A stretch of DNA of 64,000 nucleotides, from assembly GCF_006345805.1 (NCBI RefSeq), contig NC_043005.1, positions 4,774,001 through 4,838,000 of the forward strand. The letters run 5' to 3'. A program made the position numbers and the translations under genes. This DNA is from Octopus sinensis. Its lineage: Eukaryota. Position 1 is the first letter of the stretch, and every line of letters begins with the position of its first letter. Shown one piece after another: positions 2,602-63,800 of this stretch. Below the pieces are notes generated by a model, which saw only the letters and a program-made list of their open reading frames with translations, was not told the DNA's origin and searched no databases.

Positions 2602-2631
2602 TAAATCCTTTGCATCCTCTTTTTCTTTCGA

Positions 2632-2695
<64 letters not shown>

Positions 2696-8581: not shown

Positions 8582-8758
<177 letters not shown>

Positions 8759-10525
8759 TCAATACATGCCTACGCACACGCACACAATTTATACACACAT
8801 ACATCAGAATGTATGACACAATTTTCACAGATAATAAAACCAAACACTAAAACAGACCTTACTTTGAAATTGTTAATTTGAAATACTGATTATACAGAAA
8901 TTTTAATTACAATTATTATAATTATTTATTTGCGTTTATATAGTTTCCTGTTCTAACATGAATTTTCACATCTTCATAAATCGTTTTGCCCCTTCGTAAT
9001 TCCTTGTCTTGCAAGTTACTTGGTTACTCTGCCAGTGCCGGTGCCACATAAAAAGCACCCACTCCACACTGCAATGTGGTTGGCATTTGGAAGGGCATCC
9101 AGCTGTAGAAATCATGCCAAAAGTAACCTCACCTGTGCTAGTGCCACATAAAAAGCACTGAGTCCACTCTGCAGAGTGGTTGGTGTCAGCAAGGGCATCC
9201 AGCCATAGAATCCTTGCTAACACAGGCACAGTAGCCTAGAGTAGTTTTTCTATCTGGTCAGTTCCTGTCAACCGTCCTACCCATGCTTGCACGGAAGATG
9301 GACATTAAACGATGATGATCCCAAACATTAACGTACTAAGTCCTCATCATCATCATCGTTTAATGTCCGTTTTCCATGCTGGTAGAGGTTGGACAGTCTG
9401 ATTGAGGATTGGCAAGGTTTCTACAGCTGGATGCCCTTCCTAATGCCAACCACTCCGAGTGGATGTTTTTTATGTGCCACCCACACGGGAGCCAGTCCGG
9501 TGGCACTGGCACCAGCCACATCTGGATGGTGCTTTTTATGAGCTACCAGCACCAGAACCAGACAGTGGGGCTGGCATTGACCATGTTCAGATGGTACTTG
9601 TTATGTGCCACTCGCACGGGGAGCCAATCAGGCAGCACTGGTTTCAAATTTTGGCACAAGGCCAGCAATTTAAGGGGAGGGGATAAATCGATTGCAATGA
9701 CCCTGGTACTCAACTGGTACTTATTCTATCGACTCTGAAAAGATGAGAGGCAAAGTTGACCTCGGCAGAATTTGAACTCAGAACGTAAAGACAAATGAAA
9801 TGCCACCAAGCATTTTGCCAAGCGTGCAATTGATTCTGCCAGTTTGCCTAAATACTGAAGTGTTTTAAGTAGAGGGTACACTCTAATCCTGTCGTAGATA
9901 ATCTCATAAATGTCAGTAGCTCAATAAAATTGCACCTGGCCCATGATGCAAGTGGTTGGTGATAGGCTGAATGTCTACCCTGATGTAAAAACTACAGCAT
10001 ACGTAAGGACACACATGACTGGTTTTCTCTCTTGCAGTGTCTGCTAGATGACAAAAGGTCTTGGTGGGATGCTGTCTCCTCCAACCCATGGAAAAACAAA
10101 GGATAAAGATGATAATGCTACATGCTTGTCTATCTATACCTGTACAGGTGCAGCTCTGTGCATCAGAAGTTAGCATTGCCAGTCAATAAACAAATCAATG
10201 AAACAAGTACTAGATTCAAGTAAATACTGAGGGTGATAGGATTAAAGGAGGGGGTCTCTAGGGGGGAGAAACCAATAAGGGAAAATATCGACTTACTAAA
10301 CATAAATCCATTGTTGTTATTATTAGTAAATACGTTAATACACAGCAACAACAACAACAAGCACTGTAGAAAAAGAATGTAAAGTTACCTTCAATGCTAA
10401 CATCAACTTAGGATGATATGTCTAAAACCCTTAAAGGGTTACCCTAGCATGGCCACAATTCAGTACGTACTAATGTAAATCCATTATTATCATTATTAGG
10501 AATGTCTATAATAGAGAGCAGCCTA

Positions 10526-10666
<141 letters not shown>

Positions 10667-12190
10667 TTAAAACACAAGTATTAATTACAGTGTCAACATT
10701 CAGCTGTTCAGACAGTTTCTAAGAAAATATGAAATTCGATGCAGCTCAGAATCACTTGTATGATGGGGACAATCATTTATAATGGTTAAGAGAGATGGGA
10801 AGATAAGGGGACACAAACACACACACACACACACACACGTGACAGTCTTCTTTCAGTTTCCATCTACCAAATCCACTTGCAAGCTTTTGAGAAGACACTT
10901 GCCCAAGGTGCCATGGAGTGGGACTGAACCCAAAACCATGAGGTTGAAAAACCATCCAGCCATGTCTGTGTCTAGTATACAAACTAAATATCTATATTTT
11001 CTGACACAACACCATTTATAAAATTAAGCTTATTGTGTTTTTCCCACAATTCTATGCAATATTTATTCTGTTTCTTACAAGTTCAAAGACTTTGTTTTTC
11101 ATGTTTTTGGGGTTGATAAAAAAACGTACCAGGGAAGTGCCAGAAACGATGGAATCAACAAAATACGTCACCTCAAAATTTTTGACTTTGTGTCAAAATT
11201 AAAAACCAGTATTCATAATATATTTGATAAATGTTCAATGTACATTCCAGAATATAATGCCATCTTTAATGCCTTAAAAACAATGCTGCCAATATTTGTA
11301 TTTGTTCTGTAGGCTAAGTTTTAATCTTTAACAGATTATCACCATGTTTGTATGAAGGGGACAGCATATTTAGCTGTATAGTATCACCATCATCATCTAC
11401 AAATCCCCGATAAGGTCCCAAAACAGCTGAAGTGAGTCACCAGGTCCCATTCGTCCCCCAATTCTTGATTCAATGCTGGGACTATTTCACTTCAATCCTT
11501 TAGCATTGAAACTGGCCCAAATATTCTTACTCTTAAATTCAAGCCAGATCCAGCCTATTACACCTATCCTACAATGTCGTTGTAAAAGTAAATAATCACA
11601 TCTTTGAAATCTCAAAACTATGAGATAATGCATGATCAATTCAAAAAATTTGAATAAACTGAATGCTAAAGGGTTAAAACATTTGTATAAATTCCCTTTT
11701 ACACAAACCAACAATGGGGCCTTTGCATGGCCACTCAACCTGTGAAAAATATCAAATCACCATCAAAGCACACATTACTGCTTTAAAGAACGCATTAAAT
11801 AACATAGTCCTAGGTACATTGTGTACAAAGGAAAGACAGGCTGACTTTTGATCATAGGTGTGTTTGATCTGAACTGACCGGGGATTAAATAACTTCCTTT
11901 TCTTTTTATCATCAAAAGTTTTATTTCTAAAACCTATCAGCCCCAGACACTAGAACTTTGGTTAACAATCAAGAGAAATCATAGTTATAAAACATCAAGC
12001 TGAGTGTTTACAGCTGTTCCAGTGACACAAAAGGTTACGGAACATTCTAAAATAACTAAGATAACATTCACACACACACACAAACCAAAATGGAAAATTA
12101 ATTTGGATATGTAGACGACTGAGAACTAGATGTTAATTTTGTATCTTCCAAATTCCTAAAGAGATCAGGTTTAAAAAAACTGTCACATAC

Positions 12191-14156: not shown

Positions 14157-15735
14157 ATGGTATTTAGAACATAAACCAACATGAAATTTTAATGGAAGAT
14201 TTTAATTTAGATCACTTGAAAACAAGAAGCCAGTGAGTGAGAAACCATGAAACAGAATATATCTCTTACTTGGTCATGGTTACAGCAACAACATTTGTAA
14301 CAAAAAGTAGCAAAAAGACACTTTCAAAGATTGGAGACTGTCGTATAATTTTGAAGAATCGGTTTTGCGTCCATCATTAATATTTTAGCTCTCACTCTTT
14401 TCCATATTCCGATTTAGTTAAACGATTCCACCCCAGAACTTATCTCAAGTCTGGAATGTCTCCTGTTGACTTTTTTTGAACTACTAAGTTATGGGGATGT
14501 AAACAGAACAACTGTTGTCAAGGGCTCAGGTGGAGGAGGAGGACAGAGAGAAATGCATACACACATGTGTATGTGTGTGTGGACTGGACAGAATCCCTTG
14601 AAGCAGATTCTTCTGCAGCTGGATGCCCTTCCTGTCACCAACCCCCAACTGCTTCCAACTAATGTAATATTTTCCCATGGCTGGATATGCTTTAAATGGG
14701 AAACTAACAAAGCATCTGTTTGACAGCGACACTTGTTTGCAACTAACATGATGTCAAGACACACACATCTTTCGGTTTCCACCTTATCTAATCCATTCAG
14801 ATGGTTTGGGTTAATCTGGGGCTTAAGGCACCTATCCCTGGTGCCACACACTGGGACTAAACTCAAAACCAGTACAAGGTTGGGAAGCAAACTTCTTACC
14901 CCCCACACACCTATGTCTGTGCCGATTACAAAAGGTGAAAGTTTTAAAAACTGGCTTCAGTCACTGATCTGTGGCCATGCTACAGCACGGTCTTTAAGGG
15001 ATTTTACTTTAGTCCAACAATCTTCAGTACCTCATTTGATATTTTATGGACCTTAGAAAGAGGAAGAAAAGAAAACATAAGGACAATTCTACAAGGCATT
15101 ACTGCTTGATGTTACACATTCTATCACTCTTTGACTGATGGGTCCATCCATACTTGCCAAAAATGTGGTTTCAGGTTCAATCCCACTACATGGTACCTTC
15201 GGCAAGTGTCTTCCACTATAGCCCTGGGTTGACCAAAGCCTTGTGTATGTGTGTGTGTGTGTAGTAGTAGTAGTAGTATCAGTAGTAGCAGCAGCAGTAG
15301 AGTGTGTGTGTGTGTGTGTGTGTGAGTATTTAAATTTGTGATCATTTGTACAAAGATTGTGAGAGGCAGGGTAATTATTGCCGTTTCCCCTGTCAACAAA
15401 CCATCTGCTTGCAACAAGTCTTCAAAGTAACACAGAATAAGTGGGACCTTCCTTGAAAAGCAGGCAGGGCATCGAACTGTGAACCACTGCCATTTGCCCA
15501 ATCCACACAAGCATAAAAAAAAAAAAACAAAAGGAAAAAAATGATAAACATTTAAAGGGCTTCTGCACAGTTTCTGCCTAACAAATTTCACTCTCAAGTA
15601 TTTGGCTAACTCGAGGTTAGAGTAGAAAACACTTGGCCAAGGTGCCACTCAGTGAGGAGGTCACAGTTGGAGATATATAATTATAAAGAGAATTTAAGCA
15701 GAAAGCAACAGCTGGAATGGCTTATTACCAATACC

Positions 15736-16571: not shown

Positions 16572-17348
16572 ATGTGTGTTTATATACACACAGTGTGTGT
16601 GTGATGAAAAGTTCTTAGGAAGATTAATTTTTGACGAGGAATGAACAAACATTAAATAAATATTAACCAAAAATTGACCGATATTTGTGAGAAGGAAAAA
16701 AAACGGAGATGCATTTTCTTTTTCTATTTAATACTCTGTTACTTGTTTCAGTCATTTGACTGCGGCCATGCTGGAGCACCGCCTTTAGTCGAGCAACTCG
16801 ACCCTGGGACTTATTCTTTTGTAAGCCCAGTACTTATTCTATCAGTCTCTTTTGCCGAACCGCTAAGTAACGGGAACATAAACACACCAGCATTGGTTGT
16901 CAAGCAATGCTAGGGGACAAACACACACACAAACACATACACGGATATATATATATATATACATATATACGACAGGCTTCTTTCAGTTTCCGTCTACCAA
17001 ATCCACTCACAAGTCTTTGGTCAGCCCGAGGCTATAGTAGAAGACACTTGCCCAAGGTGCCACGCAGTGGGATTGAACCCGGAACCATGTGGTTGGTAGA
17101 CAAGCTACTTACCACACAGCCACTCCTGCGCCTAATGATGTTTTAATGATTTTTTTTTTTACCATATGATTTTATAGTTCCCACAAATTTGACCATTAAT
17201 ATGGATTGGCTATTTGGTTAATAAGTTCATTTCCCAACCATGTGGCTTCGGGTTCAGTCCCACTGTGTGACCTTGTGCAAGTGCTGTCTATTACAGTCTT
17301 GGGCTAACCAAAGTGGATTCCAAGGACGAAAACTGAAAGAAGCCCATC

Positions 17349-24985: not shown

Positions 24986-25240
<255 letters not shown>

Positions 25241-26244: not shown

Positions 26245-26341
26245 CGGTTTATTTCTTTATATTAAAAATTTTTATGTATTGATTAAGTCTTTCCTTGTTT
26301 GTTTTGCAAAATAGTGGTTTTGTCTCGAATTATATTATATA

Positions 26342-26382
<41 letters not shown>

Positions 26383-26388
26383 GGACGG

Positions 26389-27032: not shown

Positions 27033-27800
27033 TCATTGCCATTAAATGGAAATAAAAAAACCAAACAAACAAGTCATATAAGGTGCAAACACAAAAGCAA
27101 GCATTTAAAAAATTTTTTAAGCTTGCTTACAAACCACATGGTTCCGGGTTCAGTCCCACTACATTGTACCTTGGGCAAGTGTCATCTACTATAGCCTCAG
27201 GCCGACCAAAGCCTTGTGAGTGGATTTGGTAGATGGAAACTGAAAGAAGCCCATCGTATACATGTGTGTGTGTGTGTGTGTGTTTGTGTGTCTGTCCCCT
27301 CAACATCGCTTGACAACCGATGGTGTGTATACGTCCCTGTAACTTAGTGGTTCGGCAAAAGAGACCGATAGAATAAGTACTAGGCTTACAAAGAATAAGT
27401 CCTGGAGTTGATTGGCTTGACTAAAGGTGGTGCTCCAGCATGGCCACAGTCAAATGACTGAAACAAGTAAAAGAGTAAACCTGAAATTTTCTTCATCATA
27501 TTTGTGCTGAAATAAAAAACAGTTTCTAGTGATCTCAGGTAAATCAAATGATTTTTGTTAATTTATTAGCTTCACAGGTGTAGGCATGGCTGTGTGGTTA
27601 AGAAGCACTTCCTAACGATGTGGTTTCCAGTTGTCTCATTGTTCAGCACTTCTTGTGCATCTTATGCTATTGCCCTGGGCCCATCAAAGCTTTGTGGATG
27701 GATTTGGCAGAGGGAAACTGAAAGAAGCTTGTAGTGTGTGTTTCTACCTCTTTGTTTTGATATCACATGATAGTGACACTGCAAACTGAAAGAATCCCAG

Positions 27801-38348: not shown

Positions 38349-38519
38349 GGCGCAGGAGTGGCTGTGTGGTAAGTAGCTTGCTAACCAACCACATGGTTCC
38401 GGGTTCAGTCCCACTGCGTGGCATCTTGGGCAAGTGTCTTCTGCTATAGCCACGGGCCGACCAATGCCTTGTGAGTGGATTTGGTAGACGGAAACTGAAA
38501 GAAGCCTCTCGTATATATG

Positions 38520-38606
<87 letters not shown>

Positions 38607-38808
38607 TGTGTCTGTGTTTGTCCCCCTAGCATTGCTTGACAACCGATGCTGGTGTGTTTATGTCCCCATCACTAAGCGGTTCGGCAAAAGGGACCGATAG
38701 AATAAGTACTGGGCTTACAAAGAATAAGTCCCGGGGTCGATTTGCTCGACTAAAGGCGGTGCTCCAGCATGGCCACAATCAAATGACTGAAACAAGTAAA
38801 AGAGTAAA
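38349..38808 (+). mobile_element. tRNA-derived SINE family A (near full length) with internal (TA)n(TG)n
   Basis: A box tggctgtgtgg, B box ggttcagtcc, CORE-like cttgggcaagtgtc, end ..gaaacaagtaaaagagtaaa. Other copies at about 190-565(-), 16734-17132(-), 27120-27478(+), 43250-43580(-), 55635-56018(-), 62530-62895(-). Confidence 0.9.
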
Positions 38809-40302
38809 TTAAAAGCTTCCTTCAAAATTTCCTGCTGATTTATGATCCAAACACCAGCCTAGAAATGATAAAACTAGTGAAATTAAATTCCTCATTATTG
38901 TTAATGTTAATTGAAACAAAGGTAGTGGATTTCAGCAGAAATATGGCAACTGAAAATGTTAAAAGAACATACAATTTTTTTTTTTCCATTTTGTCTGTCT
39001 ACAACAATGTTTCTTAAGATTTTTTTATTAATGACCCCCTCCCCCTTTCAATCTACTAAATGCTCCTAGCCATTTATGTTTTAAAAAATCTTATATTTTT
39101 ATAATTAAATATTATTAGAAATTGTATTTAAAAAATTGTTAAAATATTTTAAACAATAAAATCTTACACAGACCCCCACCCCAAGGGTCATATGGACTAC
39201 AGTTGAGAACTACTGGCCCTAAAACATTATATATCATTGCTATCATTCTGTCTTTGTGATTTTGGTACCTCATGAAACAAATTTCAAGTGAATTTAATAG
39301 ATTTTTCTTAAATGTTTGCATTTCTATGCTTGCAGGGGTCAGATGGAAATTGTTGAGGCAGTTTTTCTATGGCTAGATACCCTACCCTGTTGACAACATT
39401 TACCCGTTTCCAAGTAAGGTAATACTTCTCCCCATGGCAGGCAAGCTTTCACACAACACTGGAAATGACTAACTCTGCTTGTATGACCGTGACACACATT
39501 GACAACCCATCATGTGGTGTCAAGACAAGGAGATACTAACACACACAAGTTAATTTCAGTTTCCTTCTACCACATCCACTCAAAAGTTTTGGTCAGCCCA
39601 GGGTTGTAGTAAAAGGATTCATTCAACACAACGGAACTGAAACCAAAACTACAATGGTTGGCTTCTTAACTACACAGCCATCATCATTGTTTAACATCCA
39701 CTTTCCATGCTAGCATGGGTTGGACCATTTTGACTGAGGGCTGGCAAACCAGATGGCTGCACCAGGCTCCAATCTTGATCTGGCAGAGTTTCTACTGCTG
39801 GATGCCCTTCCTAACGCCAACCACTCCGAGAGTGTAGTGGGTGCCACCAGCATGGGGCCAGTCAGGCAGTACTGACAATGACCTCACTCGAATCTTTTAC
39901 ACATGCCACCGGAATAGGTGCCAGTAAGGCGACGCTGGTAACGATCATGCTCGAATGGTGCCCTTAGGTGCCACCGGCTCAGATTGTGCTCTTGGCACCC
40001 TACTAGCACAGCCATACATATATATATATACACACACACACATTTCATATGTACATCATTGTTTTATTTTTAAAGTTCTATTTTCATTGTTTGATTTGAC
40101 TATATATATATATAGATAGATAGATAACACACACACACACACACACACAACCAGAGAGAGAGAGAGAGGGAGATGTTAATGTTTCTTTTTTTAATGTTCA
40201 GTTGTAATAAAAACAATTTTACATGTCACAGTCAATAATGTTCTTGTTTAAGAATGAATAAATATATACACATGCACACATACATATATGTATGTATGTG
40301 CA

Positions 40303-40350
<48 letters not shown>

Positions 40351-40354
<4 letters not shown>

Positions 40355-42064: not shown

Positions 42065-44931
42065 CTTTGATGATAAAGTGTATAATAGAAACGTTCTCCA
42101 TTTGTTCTCATTATTAATTACAGCTTTTTTTTTTAATTATATATATATGTATATATATTTCAACAGAATTCTAAACACTAATAAATGAAGCAAGCTAGTT
42201 GAGTTCATAATCCACTGCACCACTTCTTAGCAAAGTATGTTTGGTATCTTAAAGACCGAGACGCTACTATCTCAATCATACACATTAGTAGTACTCATGA
42301 TATACAAACAAAAACATATCAACTTCTTGTAACAGCAATGTTTTTTGTTTTTGGTTTATTTTCAGTATTGTATCGAAGTCTGAATGATGAATAAAAATGT
42401 AACCATCAAGGTCATCATTTGACATCCACTTTTCCATGCTTATATGGGTTACAGAGTATTCGTTGAGAAAGAAGATCTTGTATAGTTGAATGCCCTTCCT
42501 GTCACCAACCGTCACCTGTCTCCAAGCAAGGCAATAATTCCTTTATAGCTCGACAGGTTTTTCATGGGACACTGGAAACAGATATCATCACCTGTATGAT
42601 GGTGATGCTTGTTTATGACAATCTCATGATGTCAAGACAAGGATACATACAAACACACACACACTTGGGAATATGTTAAAAGAGTTAAGAAATAGGAATT
42701 ATGAAGAAAAGATTTAAAAACTGATGTTATTTTTGTCTTTGTCATGTTGTTCATGTAGAGGAGAATATAGTTTGACATACATCTGATGGACTAAATGTAT
42801 GTATATTAATGATAACGTAAGCTGCTGTAATCCTTTATGAAATTTTTTAAAGCTTACATTCTTTTACAATTCTGAGACAAGTCATCACCGATGCCAGTGT
42901 CCATTCATAAAAGCATTTTCACCATTTTAGTGACAACATTTACAATGATGGCAACAAAATTAAGATAGATGGCAACATGACGGAGACACAAGATAATGAA
43001 TTTAAGGCTGATGCTTATGATTTGGAGGCTGACAATAAGATTGAAGTTGAGAAGTGATTATGGTAAGAATGTAAACGGTCATCAATAAAAGAAATATTCT
43101 AAGAAAATAGAATTGATTTTTTTAAAGATCAACTACATGGCATTGAAAAGATTCCCCCTCTCCTATAAATTGAAGCAAAATCTTTAAAAGACAAAGACTA
43201 AGAAAATAAGTTTATTCTAATCCCAACACAAAGTGGTTATTGTCTTTTATCTTTTACTGGTTCCAGTCATTAGACTGTGGCCATGCTGGGGCACCACGTT
43301 GAAAGAATTAACTCCAGTAATTTTTTTAAAGCCTGGCACTTATTTTATTGATCTCTTTTGCTAAACCACTAAGTTACGGGGGACATAAACACATCAACAT
43401 CAGTTGTGAAGCAGTGGTGGGGGACAAAGAAACAAAAGTATACACACACTTAAGGGGCTTTCTGTCTACCTAATCCACTCACAACGCTTTGGTCGTCCCA
43501 AGGGCATGGTAGAAGACACCTGCCCAAGGTGCCACACAGTGGGACTGAACACAGAACCATGTAGTTAGGAAACAAACAACTGTAAAGCTGCTAGTGTGTA
43601 CACACTGCATCTAAGATAAGCAAACAAAACCCACTGCATATTGCTGCACTGGTGCCTGTGGTTCCTTGACTAGCGTGAAATAGCAGCCAAATCTTCCTCA
43701 AATCAAATTCTACCAACTTAACTGAAGACAGGGCACATTATACAAAGTGGTTCTGAATGCATTACATCTGAGTGAAATGCAAGATGGTCATAACTGGAGT
43801 GCCTTCGATCACAGAACTGCTCTATCAGGGCTGACACAGGGTTAAGTATCAACAGATACAATTGTTTGTTCTGTTTGGGTTACATCCACTTTTTCATGCT
43901 TGCATGGGTTAGATGAATATATTATTAAGGCATTGTTTTACTGAGCCTGATGCCCTTACTGTCACTAACCCTTGCCTGTTTTACAAGCAAGGGATCTCTT
44001 TTTCCATACATCTATGAAGGCTTGAAGTGAGTGGATGATTTGTTGCAAATGGGAGAGACAGCAACAACACTGCATGTACTGAATGACCTTCATAGAGCAC
44101 ACACGTACAAACACGAAAACACACATACCTATAAATTATCATCATAATTTAAGGCCCATCTTCTGTGCTGGCATGGGTTGGACAGTCAGATGCAATGAGC
44201 CGGAAAACTGCGCCAAGCTCCCATGTCAGCCTTGACATAGTTTCTATGACTGGATGCCCTTCCTTATGCCAATCACTTGGCAGAATGTACTAGGTGCTTG
44301 TTTCATGACACCAGCACTTGTGAGATCATGCTCCCTTCAAATGAACAGTTGTAGTAAATAGGGAAAAGACACCCTTTGGTCATGAAGACTGTGGGATTGC
44401 ACCTAGAAAGTTACCCTCTGAGGCACAAGTCCTGGTAAGATTGTTTTTAAGGAAGACCAACAATTGCCCATGCATACCAGCCTCCCCTCTCCACGCCACC
44501 AATGTTATCCAAGGGAAAGGCAAAGACCAATATGGCTTGGCACCAATGACGTCACAACTCATTTCTACAGCTGAGCAACATGATATAAAGTATCTTGCTC
44601 AAAAACACAACACACAGCCCGGTCTAGGAATCAAACTCACTACCTCATGATTGTGAGTCCAACGCTCTTACTACTGAACCATACACCTTCACATGTAGTA
44701 AATACATACATATATATATATATGTGTGCTGTGTGGTCGATGCTAAAGCCTGCATGGTTTATACCAGTGCTGGTAGCACCTAAAAACCACCCACTACACT
44801 CTTGGCATTATGAAGGACATCCAGCTGTAGAAACCTTGCCAGATCAGATTGGAACCTAGTGCAGCCTCCTCGGTCCTCAGTCAAACCGTCCAACACATGC
44901 CAGCATGGAAAGCAAACGTTAAACGATGATG

Positions 44932-53590: not shown

Positions 53591-53990
53591 AAGAAAATTT
53601 ATTACATTTATAAAAGGAAGACCATTGGGGGGGGAGGGCACTAGAAGGGTACTTGAGGGCTGCATGCACCCCTGGGAGCTGTGGCTGAGAACTGCTGGTA
53701 TAGATAAATGCCAGAGGGGCTTCATCCAAAATAAGTGGACGGAATTGTAGAGGAAAGGCTTTAGACTTTGTTAGGAGTTGAACCGTCTCAAACAGACTTT
53801 TAAGCTATTGTAAAATAAAATGCTTCTGAATTTTTTAAAAAGCAATAGCATCCCATCAAATTGAAATTATTGAGTGTAGGATTAAGAATCCTGGAACAGA
53901 TTAACTGCTTAAGTTATTTTAATCAAGGTACATCACAGAAAACAACATTCAAGAAGAGAGAATTCTACAAAAAAGCAATGTTTTCCTTAC

Positions 53991-54085
53991 CTCTTTGCCT
54001 TTTGTTTCTCCTTTTTCAAACCATTCTACAGTAACACTCCGAGATTCTTTGTGGATACAACTTATAACAGCCGAATGGACACGAC
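53991..54085 (-). CDS. KIF2A: Kinesin-13 exon, N-terminal domain: (G)RVHSAVISCIHKESRSVTVEWFEKGETKGKE
   Basis: ctctag acceptor, gtaagg donor, 95 nt, phase 1 to 0; resembles the KIF2A motif GRIH..VTVEW.E.G.TKGKE. Confidence 0.95.
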
Positions 54086-56340
54086 CTAGAGTTAAAAACA
54101 AATGAATCAACATATTAATGTCTGTTCCTCCACATTAGAAGAAGTGAGGTGTAGTGACTTTGCTGCATTTGGCACCACACCAAATCTAAAGCCTTCACTC
54201 GAAGGAGATTTCTTCAAAATACCAATAGGTGTGGTAACCATTTACATATCAAAATACAAGTGATGGAAGTCTAGATTTTATAGCAAGAAACTTTGAAACT
54301 TTGTTAGGTAGAAATTTAAAATAAAGATAGAACCGTTATTAGGAATGTTCTTGCAACTTCTGAGTAGGATTTTGGCTTAAACAAATGGACAGGTTGAAAT
54401 ATAAAAACGATAGAGAGAAAATGTTAAATGAAACCAATTTTAGATGTCTATTTATTAAAACAAATTTATAGAAACTCTTTTTAAATCATTCCTGTAGATT
54501 CCTGGATTAATTTGTTGCAAAGTAATTTAAAAGTAAATTACACCCCACCCCGCCAGTTTCTTTATTCTTTTCTTTTAAATTTAGGACAGATAGGTTTACA
54601 AAGAAACAACATCAGAAGCAAAAAAATCAAGTATTAAAAACCACACTCCATCCTCTGTTGCACGGGTTTGCTGTATCTGCTCTCTCTATCTTTTCTACCA
54701 CTACAAGTTCTGGCTGGCCTCACACCACCAACACCACCCTCCCTGTCCCACTCATCTCTCCCCCCATCAACACCTGGTGCATCCAAGCCCACCTTCCTCC
54801 CTTTCCCTACACAAACCCCTACACCTGATCCTTCCTCTCCCAAAACTACATCACTCTGCAATCTCCACCCTACTCATGCCATCCCTGCAGGTATTGACTT
54901 GCAATTGTTTAGACATTAACAGCCCCAACCTAATGTCTCCAATCTTGGGAGGTGTACAAGGGTCAGGGGCTCTACCTCTGCCTCCAAACTCAGTAATAAA
55001 AAAAGACAAAGAGAAAAAAACACGACAGAGCTAGAATAATCCTTGACTTAGCACATTACCATTATAATTATTACAGGAATAAAAAAAACACCAAGTGAAA
55101 GCAATGTAGTTTTAATTCTTTTCACAATTTGCTAAAAAATTCCTCAACCATAATATACACATACCATTTTCAAATGATCCAAATAAAAACCTTCCATCAA
55201 AATTCCATGTTAATTTGTTCCAAACACCAGCTTAATAATGACAAAATTATTTTACTAAATTCTTTGTTGAAAGTAATTGAAAGAGAGGAGCTTGTATTTT
55301 TAACAGAAATATAACATCAAAAGGATTGAAACGATTTTTTAAAAAACCTTCCATCACAACTTGTTAGTTTATTTTCCAAATACCAGTTTAATCATGACCA
55401 AGTTATTTTACTAAGCTACTTTATTATCTTCAAGATTAATTAAAACAAAGCAGTGTATTTCCGTAGAAATATGGAGACAAATGGGTTAAATTTAATGAAA
55501 AATTTATAACTTGCAAAAACTGGAGTTAACCAGTGAGTTACTAAAAGTTACTCTGAGTAATTGGATTAATTTACTCAGAGATGCAAACCCGTGTGAAAAA
55601 TAACAGTAAAGTCAGTGTTCACATATTCAATCCTTTTATCTTACTCTTTACTCTTACTTGTTTCAATCATTTGACTGTGGCCATGCTGGAGCACCACCTT
55701 TAGTCAAGCAAATCGACCCCAGGACTTATTCTTTGTAAGCCTAGTACTTATTCTATCGGTCTCTTTTGCCGAGCTGTTAAGTTACGGGGACATAAACACA
55801 CCAGCATCAGTTGTCAAGTGATGTTGGAGGGCACAGACACAGAAACATACACACACACATATATGTATATATATATATATATATATATACGATGGGCTTC
55901 TTTCAGTTTCCATCTACCAAATCCACTCACAAAGCTTTGGTCAGCCCGAGGCTATAGTAGGAGACACTTGCCCAAGGTGCCACACAGTGGGACTGAACCC
56001 AGAACCACTCCTGCACCTATGACCATATGTCTGTTGAAATACATTATATTTGTTTCAATTAGTGAACAACATATTAAGTAATTGTCATTATTAATCCTTT
56101 TAATCTTAATCTGCTTGGGACTGTAGGTGCCAACACGAACCGGATCTAAAAGTATCAGGACTGAAGCTATAAAAAACCACTTGCAACATATCAATTTGGC
56201 ATTTAATCTCCTTCGAAGGAGACCCCTTCTGAATCATTGTTTCCATTCATGGAATCATTCCTGGGACTCCTTTTTTGAAGGATAGCTAGCAGCTGTCACT
56301 TGGCATTCTCTTGGATTTCCTCAACATCTTGAAATCTTAC

Positions 56341-56770: not shown

Positions 56771-58611
56771 CTTGTTTGGGTTTCCCACTGTGGTGACAAG
56801 AGCCTTGGTTCCTGGGTCATAACCATAAATCCACTGTCTGTCACCTGTTATGACCATTTTCAAAAAGGTCATCTTTCTTAACTTGATCAAGGAGATCCTG
56901 CACAGCTGAAACCCGATCTTGCTTTTGAGGCGACCACACACTACACACCTTCCTTCCAAGCACTGCTGTAAACAACGGAAGTGAGGCAGAACATGATAAG
57001 TCCATGCATGGCAGAGTTTAATGTCAATTTGTGTCAAGTGGCTCCACTCTAAATACTATAGCTCTTCTACCGATAGCAACAGTCCCAATACTTTTAGACC
57101 AGGCCTCATGAATATATATATACAAGTAGAAAAATAATGGCAACAGAAGTGGCATTAATACCAAAAGGTAAAATCCCCCTTCAAAGTGGATGCTGTGTTA
57201 GAACACAAAATACTGTGTTGTTTACTATGAGAGAACCTCTTATATGGACTTGTGATGCATAAAAAGGCACTGGTGTCGCAAAGAATAATGGCAACAGAAG
57301 AAGTATTAATAGCAAAAGGTAATATTTATAGCAACTTCAAAAGTGCTGCCTAGCCACAGATGCCAAGGAAGGCCGAGATCAGGTGGCCTGGTTTCAGCAG
57401 CAGATCTCCCACCAGTGACAGAAACAGGAGTTCTTTTATGCACCACAAGTCCATAAGAGAGGTCGTCTCATGGTAAATGATCCAGCATTCTGTGTTCTAA
57501 CACAGCATCCACTATTAAGTGGGGATAAATATAAGGCTTCTTTCAGTTTCCAGCTACAAAAGGATTTGATTGGCCAGAGACTGTACAGGAGGCACATGCC
57601 CAAGGTGCCATGCAGTGGGGCTGAACCTAAAACCACACAGCCATGCCTCCGATTAAGTAAGAAAACTATGTATAACAGTGAAGGCTCAGGAGATGGTTAA
57701 CCCTTTGCATTCAGATTTCTCTTTCAAATGTAATGCTTATTTACTCTCATTGTTTTGAATTAATCCTGCATTTTTTAGTTGGTGCTTGGAATATAAATTA
57801 ACATGAAATGTTGAGAGATTCCAATTGAAATCGCTTTGAAACAGGAAGCCTTTATCCTGTACAGTGGTTGGTGTTAGGAAGGGCATCCAGCCATAGACAC
57901 CCATGCCAAATCAGACTGGAGTCTTGTGCAGCTCCCCAGCTCTGGTCAAACCATCCAACCCATATCAGCATGGACAACAAATGTTAAATGATGATGATGA
58001 TGGTGCGGAACCAGGGGCAAGCTTAGATGGGTTGGTATGAAAAGGATATCAAAATAAAAGAGTTACGTGAATATAAGAATAAAAACTGTACATAACAGAG
58101 ACAAGAGATGCTAAAGAAAATATAAAGACAGAGCTCCAGGCACAAGAATGGGTGTCCAGTTAAGAAGTTGGCTTCCCAACCACATGGTTTCAGGATCAAT
58201 CCCAATGCATGGTCACTTGGGAAAGTGTCTTCTATAAGCACAAGCTAACCAAAGCTTTGTGAGCAGATTTGATATATGGAAACTGAAAGAAGCCTATCAT
58301 ATATTGGTGTGAGTGTGTGTATGTGTGATATTATAAATGAGTGCCATTGTCATACAGGGTTATTCACTCCCAATGAAAGATGCTTAAAAGTGGGGAAATA
58401 TTACCTTACTTGGAAACAAGTGAGGGTTGGCAACAGGAAGGGTATCCCAGCCATAGAAAACCTGCCTCAATGAATTCTATCTGACCCACGCAAACATGGG
58501 AAGGTGAACATTAAAATCATGATGATGATGTTTTTTTTTAAATATATAAAAACAGTAGTAAAAAGAAAATTGAACTTTGAATTCAAGAATATATAATTTC
58601 TCATTCATATT

Positions 58612-58769
<158 letters not shown>

Positions 58770-60831: not shown

Positions 60832-63800
60832 TCAAAATGATGATGATGATGATGAAAGTGACATTTCATCACCATTGTTTTAACATTTACTAAGGAATGG
60901 TTCTGAAGAAAATGACTTGAGGTGTGACACAGAAGATAAACTGTTTAATACCAAACATCTGTATAAAAGCTATTTAGATTTGAATGTAAAATTCTATAAA
61001 AACCACCAAACATAAAGCTACCAAATAATTTTCATTACTCCACATCAATTTATAAATTGTCACAGACACAGTAGGGACAAGTGTGGTAGTGTGGTTAGGA
61101 AATTCATTTCATAATCATGTGGATTCAGGTTCAGTCCTACTGTGCAGCACCATGAGCAAGGGTCTACTGCTATAGCCCTGGGCTGACCAAAGCTTTGTGA
61201 GTGGATTTGGTAAGAAGAAACTGAAAGAAACCCATTACATACATGTGTGTATGGAATGGTGCATGGCTCATTAATCGTAAACAAGCATCACTGTCATACA
61301 AGCAGTGTCATTTGTTCGATGTTTAAACGAGGCTTTTGTTTACAAAGAGTACACAGTATGTCAAGAAATACGAAACACTAAGTATATAATCGCCTGGTGA
61401 TGTGATTTTTATGTTTGCTTTCCATGCTAGTATGGGTTGGATGGGTCATTGGACAAATCATCAGAATGCAAGTCAGTTATAAGAAGTCACCGCTCTCATA
61501 GACTGACATGTACAAGCACCAGTCTACAGTAGCCGTGGCTCCCAATAACAGATGGCTAGGTCTGTGAGGACTCATCCAACCCATGCCAGCATGAAAAGCA
61601 GACATAAAATGATGATGATAGTTAAGAAATAATCATCACCATCAATTTAATATCCATTTTTCCTTGTTTACGTGAGCCAGATGCACTTCCTGTTACCAAC
61701 CCTTACCTGTTTCCAAGAAAGTAAGATTTTCCACAGACAGACGTTTTTGCATGGAAAATTGGAAACTAACAATATTGTTTGTATAATGGTGATGTTTGTT
61801 CATTTACAATCCTCACAATGCCAAGACAAGGGTACACACAAACACACACATTCATATATTATGGGCTTCTTTCAGTTTCTGTCTAGCACATCCACTGACA
61901 AGGCTTTTGTCAGCCCCAGGACTATAATGCTGAGACTGAACCCAAGACCACATGATTGGGAAGCAAGCTTTTTAACCACACAGCTATGCCTGTATCTGCT
62001 TACGAACCCATTAGCATTTAAACCAGCCACATCCAGCCAAAATATTGTACCTGTTTTATGTTCCAAGGGGTCAGATCTGGCCTCTCACACCTACCCTACA
62101 ATGTCTTTCTAAAAGTAAGCAATCAAATCATCAAAATCTCACAGCTATGAATTAATGCAGGATTAATTCAAAACGACATAAATAAACGAGCATTATATTT
62201 GACCAAGTGATCTGAATGTTAGAGGGTTAAACACTGAACAATATTCCTTATCAAGGTTAGACTGTAGCAAGCAGCATTCACCTCAATAATAGCAGACAGA
62301 TATCAAAATAATGATTGCAAATGTGTGTATCTTACAAAAGGAAAAATGTATTGTTTCTATGTAAGCCAGGCATTGACAGTTGGCAGATAACGAATCAGTG
62401 ATTATGAATCACTGATTAGGAACAAATTGGCCTAAATATGGAATAACAGCAGAATGGAAACATTAACGCACGGTTGGAAATTTTGAACAAAGTTTTTAGT
62501 TCAGATGGGGGAAATGTTCTTTTAATTCGTTTCAGTCATTAGACTGTGGCCATGCTGGGACATTCCTTCAAAGAACTTTAGTCAAACAAATCAACCCCAG
62601 TACTACTTCTTTTTTTTTAAAGCCTGGTACATATTCTATTGGTCTCATTTGTCAAACAGCTAAGTTATAGGGACATAAACACACCAACAGCAGTTGTCAA
62701 GTGGTGGTGGAGGACAAATACAGATGCTAAAACACAAATGTATAAATATAACGGGCTTCATTCAGTTTCCGTCTACCAAATCCACTAACAAGGCTGCTAT
62801 AGAAGAAGGCACCTACCCAAGGTGCCACTCAGTCAGACTGAACCTGGAACCATGTGATTGGAAAGCAAGCTTCTTACCACTCAGCCATTCCTGCAACTGT
62901 TACAGAATTGCACTAATAACATTACCCCCCCCCCCCAGATTGCAATCAAGTTGATATATAGGCTCAAGAGGAACGCCTTACTCAACGCATATTAGGACTC
63001 TTGCCGTAATAAGCATACAAAAACCTATCTAGCTTTAATTGTACAGGTCTGTACAAGTCGACTTCAAGAACTTCAAGCGGAAATATTTGCAACTTTTATC
63101 TTTTTTTTCTTTTTTTTTTATATATATATATTTCTCATTTTTCAATGAGTATTTCCTCCAAGTTCTTTTCATGTAGAAAATCTAAACAGTAAACAGAAGC
63201 AATGTTGATAAAATCTCTACAGAGTATTTATTGATTCATGAGGGTTATATACAATCTATCAGGAACTGAATTTTTTTTTAAATTATAAAAATAAAAATAT
63301 AAAAAAAAAAACATAAAATACTATTCCAACTCCTCTTCAAGCAGTTTGACAGGAAACAAGTTGGAAAACAAAAAAGAGAAAAAGAAGAAAAAAACACCGT
63401 AAGAGGGTTGCTGCTTAATCTAAGGCAGAACAACACAGTTTCTGACTGGAAAATTATTTTTTATTTTATCATTATTCTTATTTTCTGGTTTAATTAATGG
63501 CTCACAGGAGTTGGCTTGCTGACAAATTATTCAATAAACCATAATGTTTAAACTCCTAACTGTACTAATAATATATTAAACATAACTATTCAAACTGGTA
63601 CAATGAACCTCGCAAGCAAACAATATTCAGCTGTGAAGTGGTATAACTTATACACACACCATAGCTAACTCGTAAAAACAAACCATTTTGTACCGTCACT
63701 ATAATTTGGGTGTTATATATTCCTAGTCTATTTCCCAGACTGTGAGAAAGAAAAAGAAAACTTATGGATGGGCTTGCCTCTTCCCCACATCATCAGGATG

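What the first reader, a model, noticed from the sequence alone, without database searches (positions are those of the whole stretch)
10389..10421. Candidate 33-nt in-frame microexon that splits and rebuilds the kinesin-13 KEC motif
Seen on minus: ttttag|ACA TAT CAT CCT AAG TTG ATG TTA GCA TTG AAG|gtaact = TYHPKLMLALK, in the phase-0 intron between ..KSLLALK and ECIRAL.., 134 nt after the upstream donor. Its 3' end (ttagcattgaag gtaact) mirrors the real exon end (ttagcattaaag gtaatt). Inclusion would keep LALK-ECIRAL but add 11 residues within the switch II helix. A 6-bp hairpin (aaccct/agggtt, 10426-10440) covers its weak pyrimidine tract. Established: the KEC motif in helix alpha-4 is needed for kinesin-13 depolymerase activity. 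Inference: a partial exon duplication kept as a regulated microexon that could tune or disable the motor.
Basis: partly seen in the sequence, partly recalled or inferred. Interest (0 to 1): 0.75.

Follow-up and report, generated by a model that had tools for sequence, protein, structure and literature searches.

The report
Intronic pseudo-exon from exon-tail duplication
The 33-base "microexon" is real as sequence, but it looks like an unused by-product of an old local duplication of the exon end next to a mobile-element fragment, and nothing shows it is ever spliced into the kinesin-13 message.

Summary
On the minus strand, ttttag|33 nt|gtaact (10421-10389) sits 134 nt into the phase-0 intron between ...KSLLALK and ECIRAL... 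of a kinesin-13 (KIF2-like) gene. It reads TYHPKLMLALK.

The resemblance to the real exon end is not chance. About 110 nt (the last ~19 nt of the exon, its donor and ~90 nt of intron; 10574-10465) is repeated 165-173 nt downstream (10409-10291) at 77% identity, z about 10.

The acceptor, the "hairpin" and the first ~15 nt of the candidate lie in a truncated head of a SINE-like repeat that occurs seven times in the window. The donor is a good copy of the real one. The acceptor is weaker than all 15 real acceptors of the gene, with a short pyrimidine tract and another AG 6 nt upstream. This intron holds 146 in-frame, stop-free AG..GT pseudo-exons. The hairpin is chance-level.

None of 227 kinesin-13 sequences examined, and none of the matched solved kinesin-13 structures, has residues at this point.

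The collections hold no cephalopod transcripts or genomes, so usage and conservation could not be tested.

Verdict: most likely a non-functional pseudo-exon. A regulated microexon is not excluded, at about 10%.

The parts
10556..10644 (-). Real exon I of the kinesin-13 gene (G)[29 protein letters not shown], which ends in phase 0
   Evidence: part of a 15-exon model with one uninterrupted reading frame. Acceptor tttttttcag, donor AAG|gtaatt.
10465..10574 (-). Duplication copy 1: the last ~19 nt of exon I, the real donor and the first ~90 nt of the intron
   Evidence: local alignment with 10409-10291, 82 identical of 107 aligned bases, z about 10. Searches give periods of 167-173 nt.
10405..10483 (-). 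Truncated head of a SINE-like dispersed repeat. It contains the candidate's acceptor AG (10423-10422) and its first ~15 nt. The signature 12-mer TGTGGCCATGCT is at 10457-10446.
   Evidence: the 12-mer occurs 7 times in the window, against 0.03 expected. The six copies elsewhere in the window all lie in repeat heads. Searches align this stretch to the repeat heads, best to the copies at 14940 and 62523 (CTTTAAGGG.TTTTA / CTTTAG|TC).
10426..10440 (-). 6-bp hairpin aaccct-tta-agggtt over the weak pyrimidine tract
   Evidence: Present but inside the SINE-derived stretch and not significant.
10389..10421 (-). The candidate 33-nt pseudo-exon (TYHPKLMLALK). It is a chimera: the 5' ~12-15 nt come from the SINE fragment and the 3' ~19-21 nt from the copy of the exon-I tail.
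10383..10388 (-). Duplicated donor gtaact, a copy of the real gtaatt
   Evidence: PWM score 8.5, rank 2 of 122 GT sites in the intron, within the range of the real donors (3.8-11.0).
10291..10409 (-). Duplication copy 2: exon-tail copy, donor copy and intron copy
   Evidence: Exon tail plus donor: 23 matches, 2 mismatches and a 2-nt indel. The rest: 59 matches, 23 mismatches and 13 gap positions.
10150..10310 (-). Diverged SINE-like copy that follows duplication copy 2 (approximate limits)
   Evidence: 69 of 138 positions match the repeat consensus, against 36.3 +/- 4.9 for shuffles.
10334..10363 (-). A neighbouring in-frame pseudo-exon with a much better acceptor (tttacattctttttctacag|). It shows the candidate is not unique.
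   Evidence: acceptor 9.3, donor 4.7, the highest summed score among the 146 in-frame pseudo-exons.
8609..8719 (-). Real exon [38 protein letters not shown]

Best explanation
The 33 nt are an intronic pseudo-exon, a by-product of sequence turnover and not a maintained coding exon.

How it arose (shown by alignment; the order of events is inferred):
- A SINE-like element lay about 75 nt into the intron after exon I.
- A local tandem duplication of about 165-170 nt then copied the last ~19 nt of exon I, its 5' splice site, the ~75 nt of intron and the head of the SINE.
- The junction of the two copies placed an AG from the truncated SINE head 33 nt upstream of the copied donor.
- Frame and openness follow partly from the copied LALK codons and partly from luck: about a 1 in 3 chance for length, and four new codons without a stop.

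Why the spliceosome is expected to skip it (inferred):
- The 3' splice site is poor. It has four U's and then purines.
- Other AGs lie 6 and 20 nt upstream, so there is no AG-free zone.
- No good branch site is evident.
- Exon I joins exon J directly and gives the universal LALKECIRAL helix.
For: - Duplication: 82/107 identity, z about 10, no shuffle of 500 reaches the score; the 20-mer is unique to the two sites.
- The duplicated part is not a dispersed repeat.
- SINE origin of the acceptor and the first codons.
- Splice-site scores come from a matrix built on the gene's own 15 sites. The acceptor scores -0.5, rank 20 of 105 AGs, below all real acceptors (1.0-17.4 leave-one-out). The donor scores 8.5.
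- AG-free zone: 21-114 nt for the 15 real acceptors, 6 nt for the candidate, and a background median of 10.
- Base rate: 146 in-frame, stop-free pseudo-exons in this intron, with the candidate third by summed score.
- No excess conservation of the exon-derived part. Fisher p = 0.056 before allowing for constraint on the parent exon. 23/25 observed against about 21/25 expected (own calculation).
- A 2-nt indel lies inside the copied tail.
- No insert at this point in 227 kinesin-13 sequences or in the best-matching solved structure, human KIF2A, which is gapped across the 11 residues; the nine other kinesin-13 chains span 326-334 residues against 342-343 of the query.
- Inclusion costs 14.5 bits against the Pfam kinesin model.
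Against: - The copied donor is as good as the real one, and both AG and GT are intact after about 23% divergence between the copies.
- The frame is open, and the insert restores K-L-M-L-A-L-K directly before ECIR.
- The exon-tail and donor part is nominally better preserved than the intronic part (23/25 against 59/82).
- Regulated microexons can have weak 3' splice sites.
- No transcript data or related genome could be consulted, so use of the exon is not excluded.
Confidence: 0.78

Rival explanations
1. One reading: a lineage-specific, regulated cassette microexon. It would add 11 residues (TYHPKLMLALK) in helix alpha-4 just before KEC. The result would be a kinesin-13 isoform with altered or abolished microtubule-end recognition.
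For: - The 33 nt are bounded by AG and GT, in phase and open.
- The donor is strong.
- The candidate ranks 3rd of 146 in-frame pseudo-exons by summed score.
- The exon-tail copy is nominally better preserved than the flanking intron copy (p = 0.056).
- The insert rebuilds seven residues like the parental ones before KEC.
- Eleven residues is close to three helical turns (own inference).
Against: - The acceptor is weaker than every real acceptor of the gene and has an AG 6 nt upstream.
- The acceptor and the hairpin are SINE-derived.
- The hairpin is chance-level.
- The preservation is explained by constraint on the parent exon alone.
- No kinesin-13 from any animal retrieved has residues here.
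- The insert moves the invariant EINKSL segment 11 residues away from KECIR inside the main tubulin-binding helix (PMC6299235). This is expected to be damaging rather than modulatory.
Confidence: 0.1
2. The copied 5' splice site, not the 33-nt exon, is what matters. It would act as an intronic U1-binding decoy or a cryptic alternative donor that affects how efficiently exon I is spliced.
For: The donor copy scores 8.5, like the real donors, and lies 167 nt from the real one. A strong acceptor follows 26 nt downstream at 10363.
Against: Using it as an alternative donor of exon I would retain 167 nt, which is not a multiple of three, and a stop comes after 10 codons ([11 protein letters not shown]). 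No evidence of conservation or use is available.
Confidence: 0.07
3. A chance resemblance or an assembly artefact: the mirror of the exon end would be coincidental, or a mis-assembled duplicate.
For: AT-rich introns contain many short self-similarities, and low-complexity (AAT)n stretches lie in both copies.
Against: The similarity covers ~110 nt with z about 10. The 20-mer match has 0.02 expected. At 77% identity with several indels, the two copies are far too diverged to be an assembly duplication.
Confidence: 0.02

Closest known systems
Intronic pseudo-exons and decoy splice sites (sequences bounded by AG and GT that are normally not spliced)
   Same: It is bounded by consensus dinucleotides and has a good donor. 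It lies among many comparable pseudo-exons in the same intron (146 in frame and open). Its 3' splice site is poor and has no AG-free zone.
   Different: Its donor and last codons are a recognisable copy of the neighbouring real exon end. Generic pseudo-exons lack this, and it makes the candidate look exon-like to a reader.
Exonisation of SINE-derived sequence (for example Alu exonisation in primates; from general knowledge)
   Same: The acceptor AG and the first ~15 nt lie in a SINE-like repeat head. A mobile element therefore supplies a potential 3' splice site inside an intron of a conserved gene.
   Different: Alu exons draw a long U-rich tract from the antisense poly-A. Here the element gives only four U's. 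No evidence of inclusion exists.
Tandem exon duplication giving alternative or mutually exclusive exons (general knowledge)
   Same: It arose by local tandem duplication of exon sequence together with the adjacent intron.
   Different: Only the last ~19 nt of the exon were copied, not a whole exon with its own acceptor. Inclusion would lengthen the protein rather than swap a segment.
Neural microexons controlled by the SRRM4/eMIC pathway (general knowledge; octopus is included in a 2026 comparative splicing preprint, 10.64898/2026.09.05.749416, which does not mention KIF2)
   Same: It is short (33 nt), symmetric and frame-preserving, and it sits in a cytoskeletal motor gene.
   Different: It is longer than the classic limit of 27 nt or less. 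It has no UGC or UC-rich element next to the AG, and no demonstrated conservation. It sits in the core of a structural helix, not in a surface loop.
Kinesin-13 family, KIF2A / KIF2C(MCAK) / Klp10A (the host gene)
   Same: The motor domain scores 336.9 bits on Pfam PF00225. The best solved relatives are human KIF2A 2GRY/6BBN at E = 8e-164, then Klp10A and KIF2C. It has KVD in loop 2 and KECIR in alpha-4.
   Different: Nothing unusual in the canonical (skipping) form. The 11-residue insert has no counterpart in any relative.

Membership tests
Kinesin-13 (host gene) | Internal kinesin motor domain with P-loop, switch I and switch II | tested here: met
   PF00225 at 336.9 bits over residues 76-399 of the spliced model. 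[18 protein letters not shown] and DLAGNERG are all found.
Kinesin-13 (host gene) | Family-specific KVD motif in loop 2 and KEC(IR) in helix alpha-4 | tested here: met
   KVKVDLTKY at 25075....SLLALK|ECIRALG across the exon I/J junction. The role of the motifs is taken from PMC6299235 and PMC5099117.
Kinesin-13 (host gene) | Closest solved structures are kinesin-13 motors | tested here: met
   KIF2A 2GRY/6BBN at E = 7.8e-164, Klp10A 6B0I, and KIF2C 1V8J/5MIO.
Alternatively spliced cassette microexon | AG...GT bounded, length a multiple of three, no stop in the phase of the flanking exons | tested here: met
   However, 146 other AG..GT pairs in the same intron meet this too.
Alternatively spliced cassette microexon | Functional 5' splice site | tested here: met
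   AAG|gtaact scores 8.5, against 3.8-11.0 for the real donors. It is a copy of the real donor.
Alternatively spliced cassette microexon | Credible 3' splice site: pyrimidine tract and an AG-free zone back to a branch site | tested here: not met
   score -0.5, below all 15 real acceptors. Pyrimidine fraction 0.61, tied for lowest; the nearest upstream AG is 6 nt away, against 21-114 nt for the real acceptors.
Alternatively spliced cassette microexon | Transcript evidence of inclusion (junction reads, cDNA or an annotated isoform) | not testable with these tools
   no protein carries the insert. The collection also holds no cephalopod kinesin-13 at all (best 78-81% identity), so this absence says nothing about the source species.
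Alternatively spliced cassette microexon | Conservation of the exon and its splice sites above intronic background in related species | not testable with these tools
   none of 10 nearby window ORFs is in the protein collection; the four metagenome hits to the 20-mer pattern have no extended homology.
Alternatively spliced cassette microexon | Within-locus proxy: the exon-derived part of the copy is better preserved than neutral expectation | tested here: inconclusive
   23/25 against 59/82, Fisher p = 0.056. About 21/25 is expected simply because the parent exon cannot change. A 2-nt indel lies in the copied tail.
Alternatively spliced cassette microexon | A comparable insert tolerated in relatives | tested here: not met
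   227 sequences have 0 residues between LALK and ECIR. The 9 with inserts are read-through of short introns (they start with V from GT and end with Q from CAG); the KIF2A structure sequence is gapped across the 11 residues.
Local tandem duplication | Two adjacent direct copies, similar beyond chance, and not a dispersed repeat | tested here: met
   outside microsatellite and SINE parts, the unit matches nowhere else in the window.
SINE-derived splice site (exonisation substrate) | The acceptor lies in sequence homologous to a dispersed repeat | tested here: met
SINE-derived splice site (exonisation substrate) | The element-derived site is actually used | not testable with these tools
   No transcript data for the source species are available.

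The most novel reading that the evidence does not exclude
A young, octopod-specific microexon, born from a duplicated exon tail joined to a SINE fragment, is included in some tissue. It would insert about three helical turns into helix alpha-4 of a kinesin-13. KLMLALK-ECIR would stay in place, and the invariant EINKSL segment would be pushed toward loop 11. This would create a natural motor isoform uncoupled from, or blind to, the microtubule end.
Probability: 0.08. Interest if true: 0.65.

Novelty: new member of a known kind. Interest (0 to 1): 0.15.

Why it matters
If the exon were used, it would be the first natural isoform with an insertion inside the tubulin-sensing helix of a kinesin-13. 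It would also be a clean example of exon birth from a partial exon duplication plus a mobile element.

As the evidence stands, it is an ordinary pseudo-exon. Its value is cautionary: a copied exon end with its donor can make intronic sequence look coding, and the look-alike is fully explained by a decayed tandem duplication.

Tried and rejected
1. Searching the 5.8-billion-protein collection for the inclusion isoform, with a 78-aa junction peptide and a 363-aa motor domain carrying the insert. No hit carries the insert. There is also no cephalopod sequence at all, so the negative result is uninformative.
2. Two invertebrate contigs with identical exon peptides (L001, L002). They are only 65-80% identical overall and lack this intron, so they are useless for intron conservation.
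3. Exact look-up of 10 ORFs around the candidate: none is in the collection.
4. A metagenome scan for TGTTAGCATTRAAGGTAAYT: four hits, all bare 18-24-nt chance matches.
5. AlphaFold of the spliced protein with and without the insert. I did not try to get round this.
6. Rfam and tRNA scans of the window: nothing found.
7. TRF found only an (ACA)n run. The duplication is too diverged for it.
8. Literature on octopus or KIF2A microexons: nothing relevant.
9. The third protein search was not spent. Exon I has no in-frame start codon and exon J only a 34-codon ORF, so genomic ORFs of relatives are unlikely to have been called.
10. Chance resemblance and assembly artefact were considered and rejected.

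Full report
**Observation.** The minus strand reads ggttttag|ACATATCATCCTAAGTTGATGTTAGCATTGAAG|gtaacttt, with the 33 nt at 10421-10389. It translates to TYHPKLMLALK. The upstream exon ends ...TTGTTAGCATTAAAG|gtaatt at 10556, and the downstream exon begins GAATGTATACGT at 8719. The intron is phase 0, and 134 nt separate the real donor from the candidate acceptor. The 6-bp hairpin aaccct-tta-agggtt occupies 10440-10426.

**Host gene.** Motif anchors and tblastn with retrieved homologues located the exons. From these I built a 15-exon model (28940 to 2296, minus strand). All sites are AG/GT, and the spliced sequence gives one uninterrupted frame from RRKSNCVK... to ...EEVDYDVE.
- It scores 336.9 bits on the Pfam kinesin motor model.
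- Its best solved relatives are human KIF2A (2GRY/6BBN, E = 7.8e-164), Klp10A and KIF2C.
- It carries KVD in loop 2 and LALK|ECIRAL across the exon I/J junction.
- KECIR lies in helix alpha-4, contacts alpha-tubulin and is needed for depolymerisation and end recognition. This is stated in PMC6299235 and used experimentally in PMC5099117.

**The mirror is a duplication.** The 20-mer TGTTAGCATTAAAGGTAATT (exon end plus donor) has one other match in the 64 kb, at 10402-10383 with two mismatches. The number expected by chance is 0.02.
- The similarity does not stop at the splice site. Positions 10574-10465 align with 10409-10291 over 122 columns, with 82 identical of 107 aligned bases (77%).
- The alignment score is 44, against 18.2 +/- 2.5 for 500 dinucleotide shuffles, none above 34.
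- The offsets are 165-173 nt.
- Outside microsatellite-like and SINE parts, this unit occurs nowhere else in the window.
- The last ~19 nt of exon I, its donor and ~90 nt of ordinary intron were therefore copied together in tandem, and the copies have since diverged by about 23%.
- A 2-nt indel (AAGTT[GA]TGTTAGC) sits in the copied exon tail. Only the last five codons (ATG TTA GCA TTG AAG, MLALK) are an in-frame copy of the parental LLALK.

**The 5' half is mobile-element sequence.** The 12-mer TGTGGCCATGCT lies 25 nt upstream of the candidate acceptor (10457-10446). It occurs seven times in the window against 0.03 expected. The six copies elsewhere in the window all sit in the head of a SINE-like dispersed repeat.
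- A multiple alignment places 10483 to about 10405 on the repeat head. It fits best the variant copies at 14940 and 62523, which read CTTTAAGGGATTTTAC and CTTCAAAGAACTTTAG|TC.
- Agreement with the repeat consensus drops to random just where the exon-tail copy begins.
- The acceptor AG, the "hairpin" and roughly the first 15 nt of the candidate are therefore repeat-derived.
- A more complete, diverged copy of the same repeat follows duplication copy 2, at about 10310-10150.
- The simplest history is a SINE about 75 nt into the intron, followed by a tandem duplication running from the exon tail into the SINE head. The order of events is inferred.

**Splice-site quality.** I built position matrices from the gene's own 15 acceptors and donors.
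- The copied donor scores 8.5. Real donors score 3.8-11.0 by leave-one-out. It ranks 2nd of 122 GT sites in the intron.
- The acceptor scores -0.5, below all 15 real acceptors (1.0-17.4), and ranks 20th of 105 AGs.
- Its pyrimidine fraction of 0.61 ties the lowest real value.
- Real acceptors have 21-114 nt free of AG upstream. The candidate has another AG 6 nt upstream, below the background median of 10 nt for intronic AGs.
- The intron contains 953 AG..GT pairs of 9-150 nt. Of these, 146 are in frame and stop-free.
- The candidate is third by summed score. The pair just downstream (10363-10334) scores better because its acceptor is far stronger.

**Hairpin.** It forms in the predicted fold. 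The 96-nt region folds no better than shuffles (z = +0.78; 155 of 200 shuffles fold at least as well). The window holds 910 perfect 6-bp hairpins with loops of 3-8 nt. No regulatory meaning can be attached to it.

**Signs of selection.** The copied exon tail plus donor shows 23 matches and 2 mismatches. The copied intron shows 59 matches and 23 mismatches (Fisher p = 0.056).
- The parental exon and donor are under constraint, so only the copy's lineage can change there.
- With 72% identity in the freely evolving part, about 85% identity (21 of 25) is expected in the exon part. By my own binomial estimate, 23 or more of 25 then has a probability of about 0.25.
- Intact AG and GT and an open 11-codon frame are also unremarkable at this divergence.
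- There is therefore no evidence that the copy is maintained.

**Relatives.** Two searches of the 5.8-billion-protein collection used queries that contained the insert.
- They returned 240 kinesin-13 sequences. Of these, 227 have nothing between LALK and ECIR.
- The nine with extra residues are genomic ORFs that read through short introns. They begin with V (from GT) and end with Q (from CAG).
- This shows the phase-0 intron position is widespread.
- The best-matching solved chain, human KIF2A, is gapped across the 11 residues in the printed alignment, and the other kinesin-13 chains listed are about 9-17 residues shorter than the query over the matched span.
- Inclusion costs 14.5 bits on the Pfam model.
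- The best hits are only 78-81% identical (bivalves and an unnamed transcript). No cephalopod sequence is present.
- The absence of an inclusion isoform therefore says nothing about the source species.

**What could not be tested.** Attempts to reach the same or related genomes failed. The two decisive tests, junction reads and cross-species conservation, remain open.

**Consequence if it were included (inference).** The insert sits inside the central tubulin-binding helix.
- It would keep K-L-M-L-A-L-K in front of ECIR.
- It would move the invariant EGAEINKSL segment 11 residues away and introduce a proline.
- Given the role of alpha-4 (PMC6299235), this would more likely cripple the motor than tune it.
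- That makes maintenance by selection less plausible.

**Verdict.** The interpretation as a regulated microexon is not supported by anything testable here, and the poor acceptor argues against it. I put about 0.78 on a non-functional pseudo-exon and about 0.10 on a real cassette exon. The rest falls on a decoy-donor role or other explanations. Interest is low unless transcript data show inclusion.

Noticed in passing
window 16736-17087 (+), 27139-27479 (-), 38394-38815 (-), 43246-43559 (+), 55647-56007 (+), 62519-62852 (+), 14940-15110 (+, variant), plus many tail-only pieces such as 10847-10938: An abundant SINE-like dispersed repeat. The head reads ...TACTTGTTTCAGTCATTTGACTGTGGCCATGCTGGAGCACC.... 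It has an internal (TA/CA)n microsatellite and a conserved tail. Copies are 70-87% identical to each other. No tRNA or Rfam match was found.
   Followed up: partly
window 9285-9400 and 9640-9830 (the same intron); also 2010, 26451, 39709, 50907: Other repeats in the intron. One is a near-palindromic element (catggaaaacggacattaaacgatgatgat ... atcatcatcgtttaatgtcc...). Its reading HGKRTLNDDDD, or a close variant of it, recurs at five sites in the window. A further SINE-like stretch lies at 9830-9640.
   Followed up: no
window 10334-10363 (-): A second in-frame pseudo-exon (CLLLLLLCIN). Its acceptor (tttacattctttttctacag) is itself the duplicated counterpart of cacttatttctgtag at 10530-10544. 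It scores higher than the reported candidate.
   Followed up: partly
L001 (ERZ25067906 ctg3983) and L002 (ERZ25067903 ctg30501), genes at about 10001-10330: Two large eukaryotic contigs filed under ENA metagenome assemblies. They encode kinesin-13 genes whose exon reads straight through LALKECIRAL. The K|E intron is therefore absent in that lineage, although it is present in many other animals (read-through ORFs P0002, P0012, P0014-P0016, P0018, P0023, P0025 and P0080).
   Followed up: partly
protein collection: No cephalopod kinesin-13, whether annotated, UniRef or transcript-derived, appears among the candidates that share most words with the query. The best identities are 78-81% (Tegillarca, Mercenaria and an unnamed Logan transcript, P0121).
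   Followed up: partly
window 53967-54101 (-) and 2296-28940 (-): The kinesin-13 gene spans at least 52 kb of the window. A putative N-terminal exon (...SRSVTVEWFEKGETKGKE) lies about 25 kb upstream of the neck and motor exons. Exons for roughly 70 residues in between, and the C-terminal end, were not located.
   Followed up: no
window 2631-2691, 2853-2893, 26336-26383, 40311-40351, 58606-58764, 10820-10838: Long (TA)n and (CA/GT)n microsatellites. Several are embedded in the SINE-like repeats.
   Followed up: no
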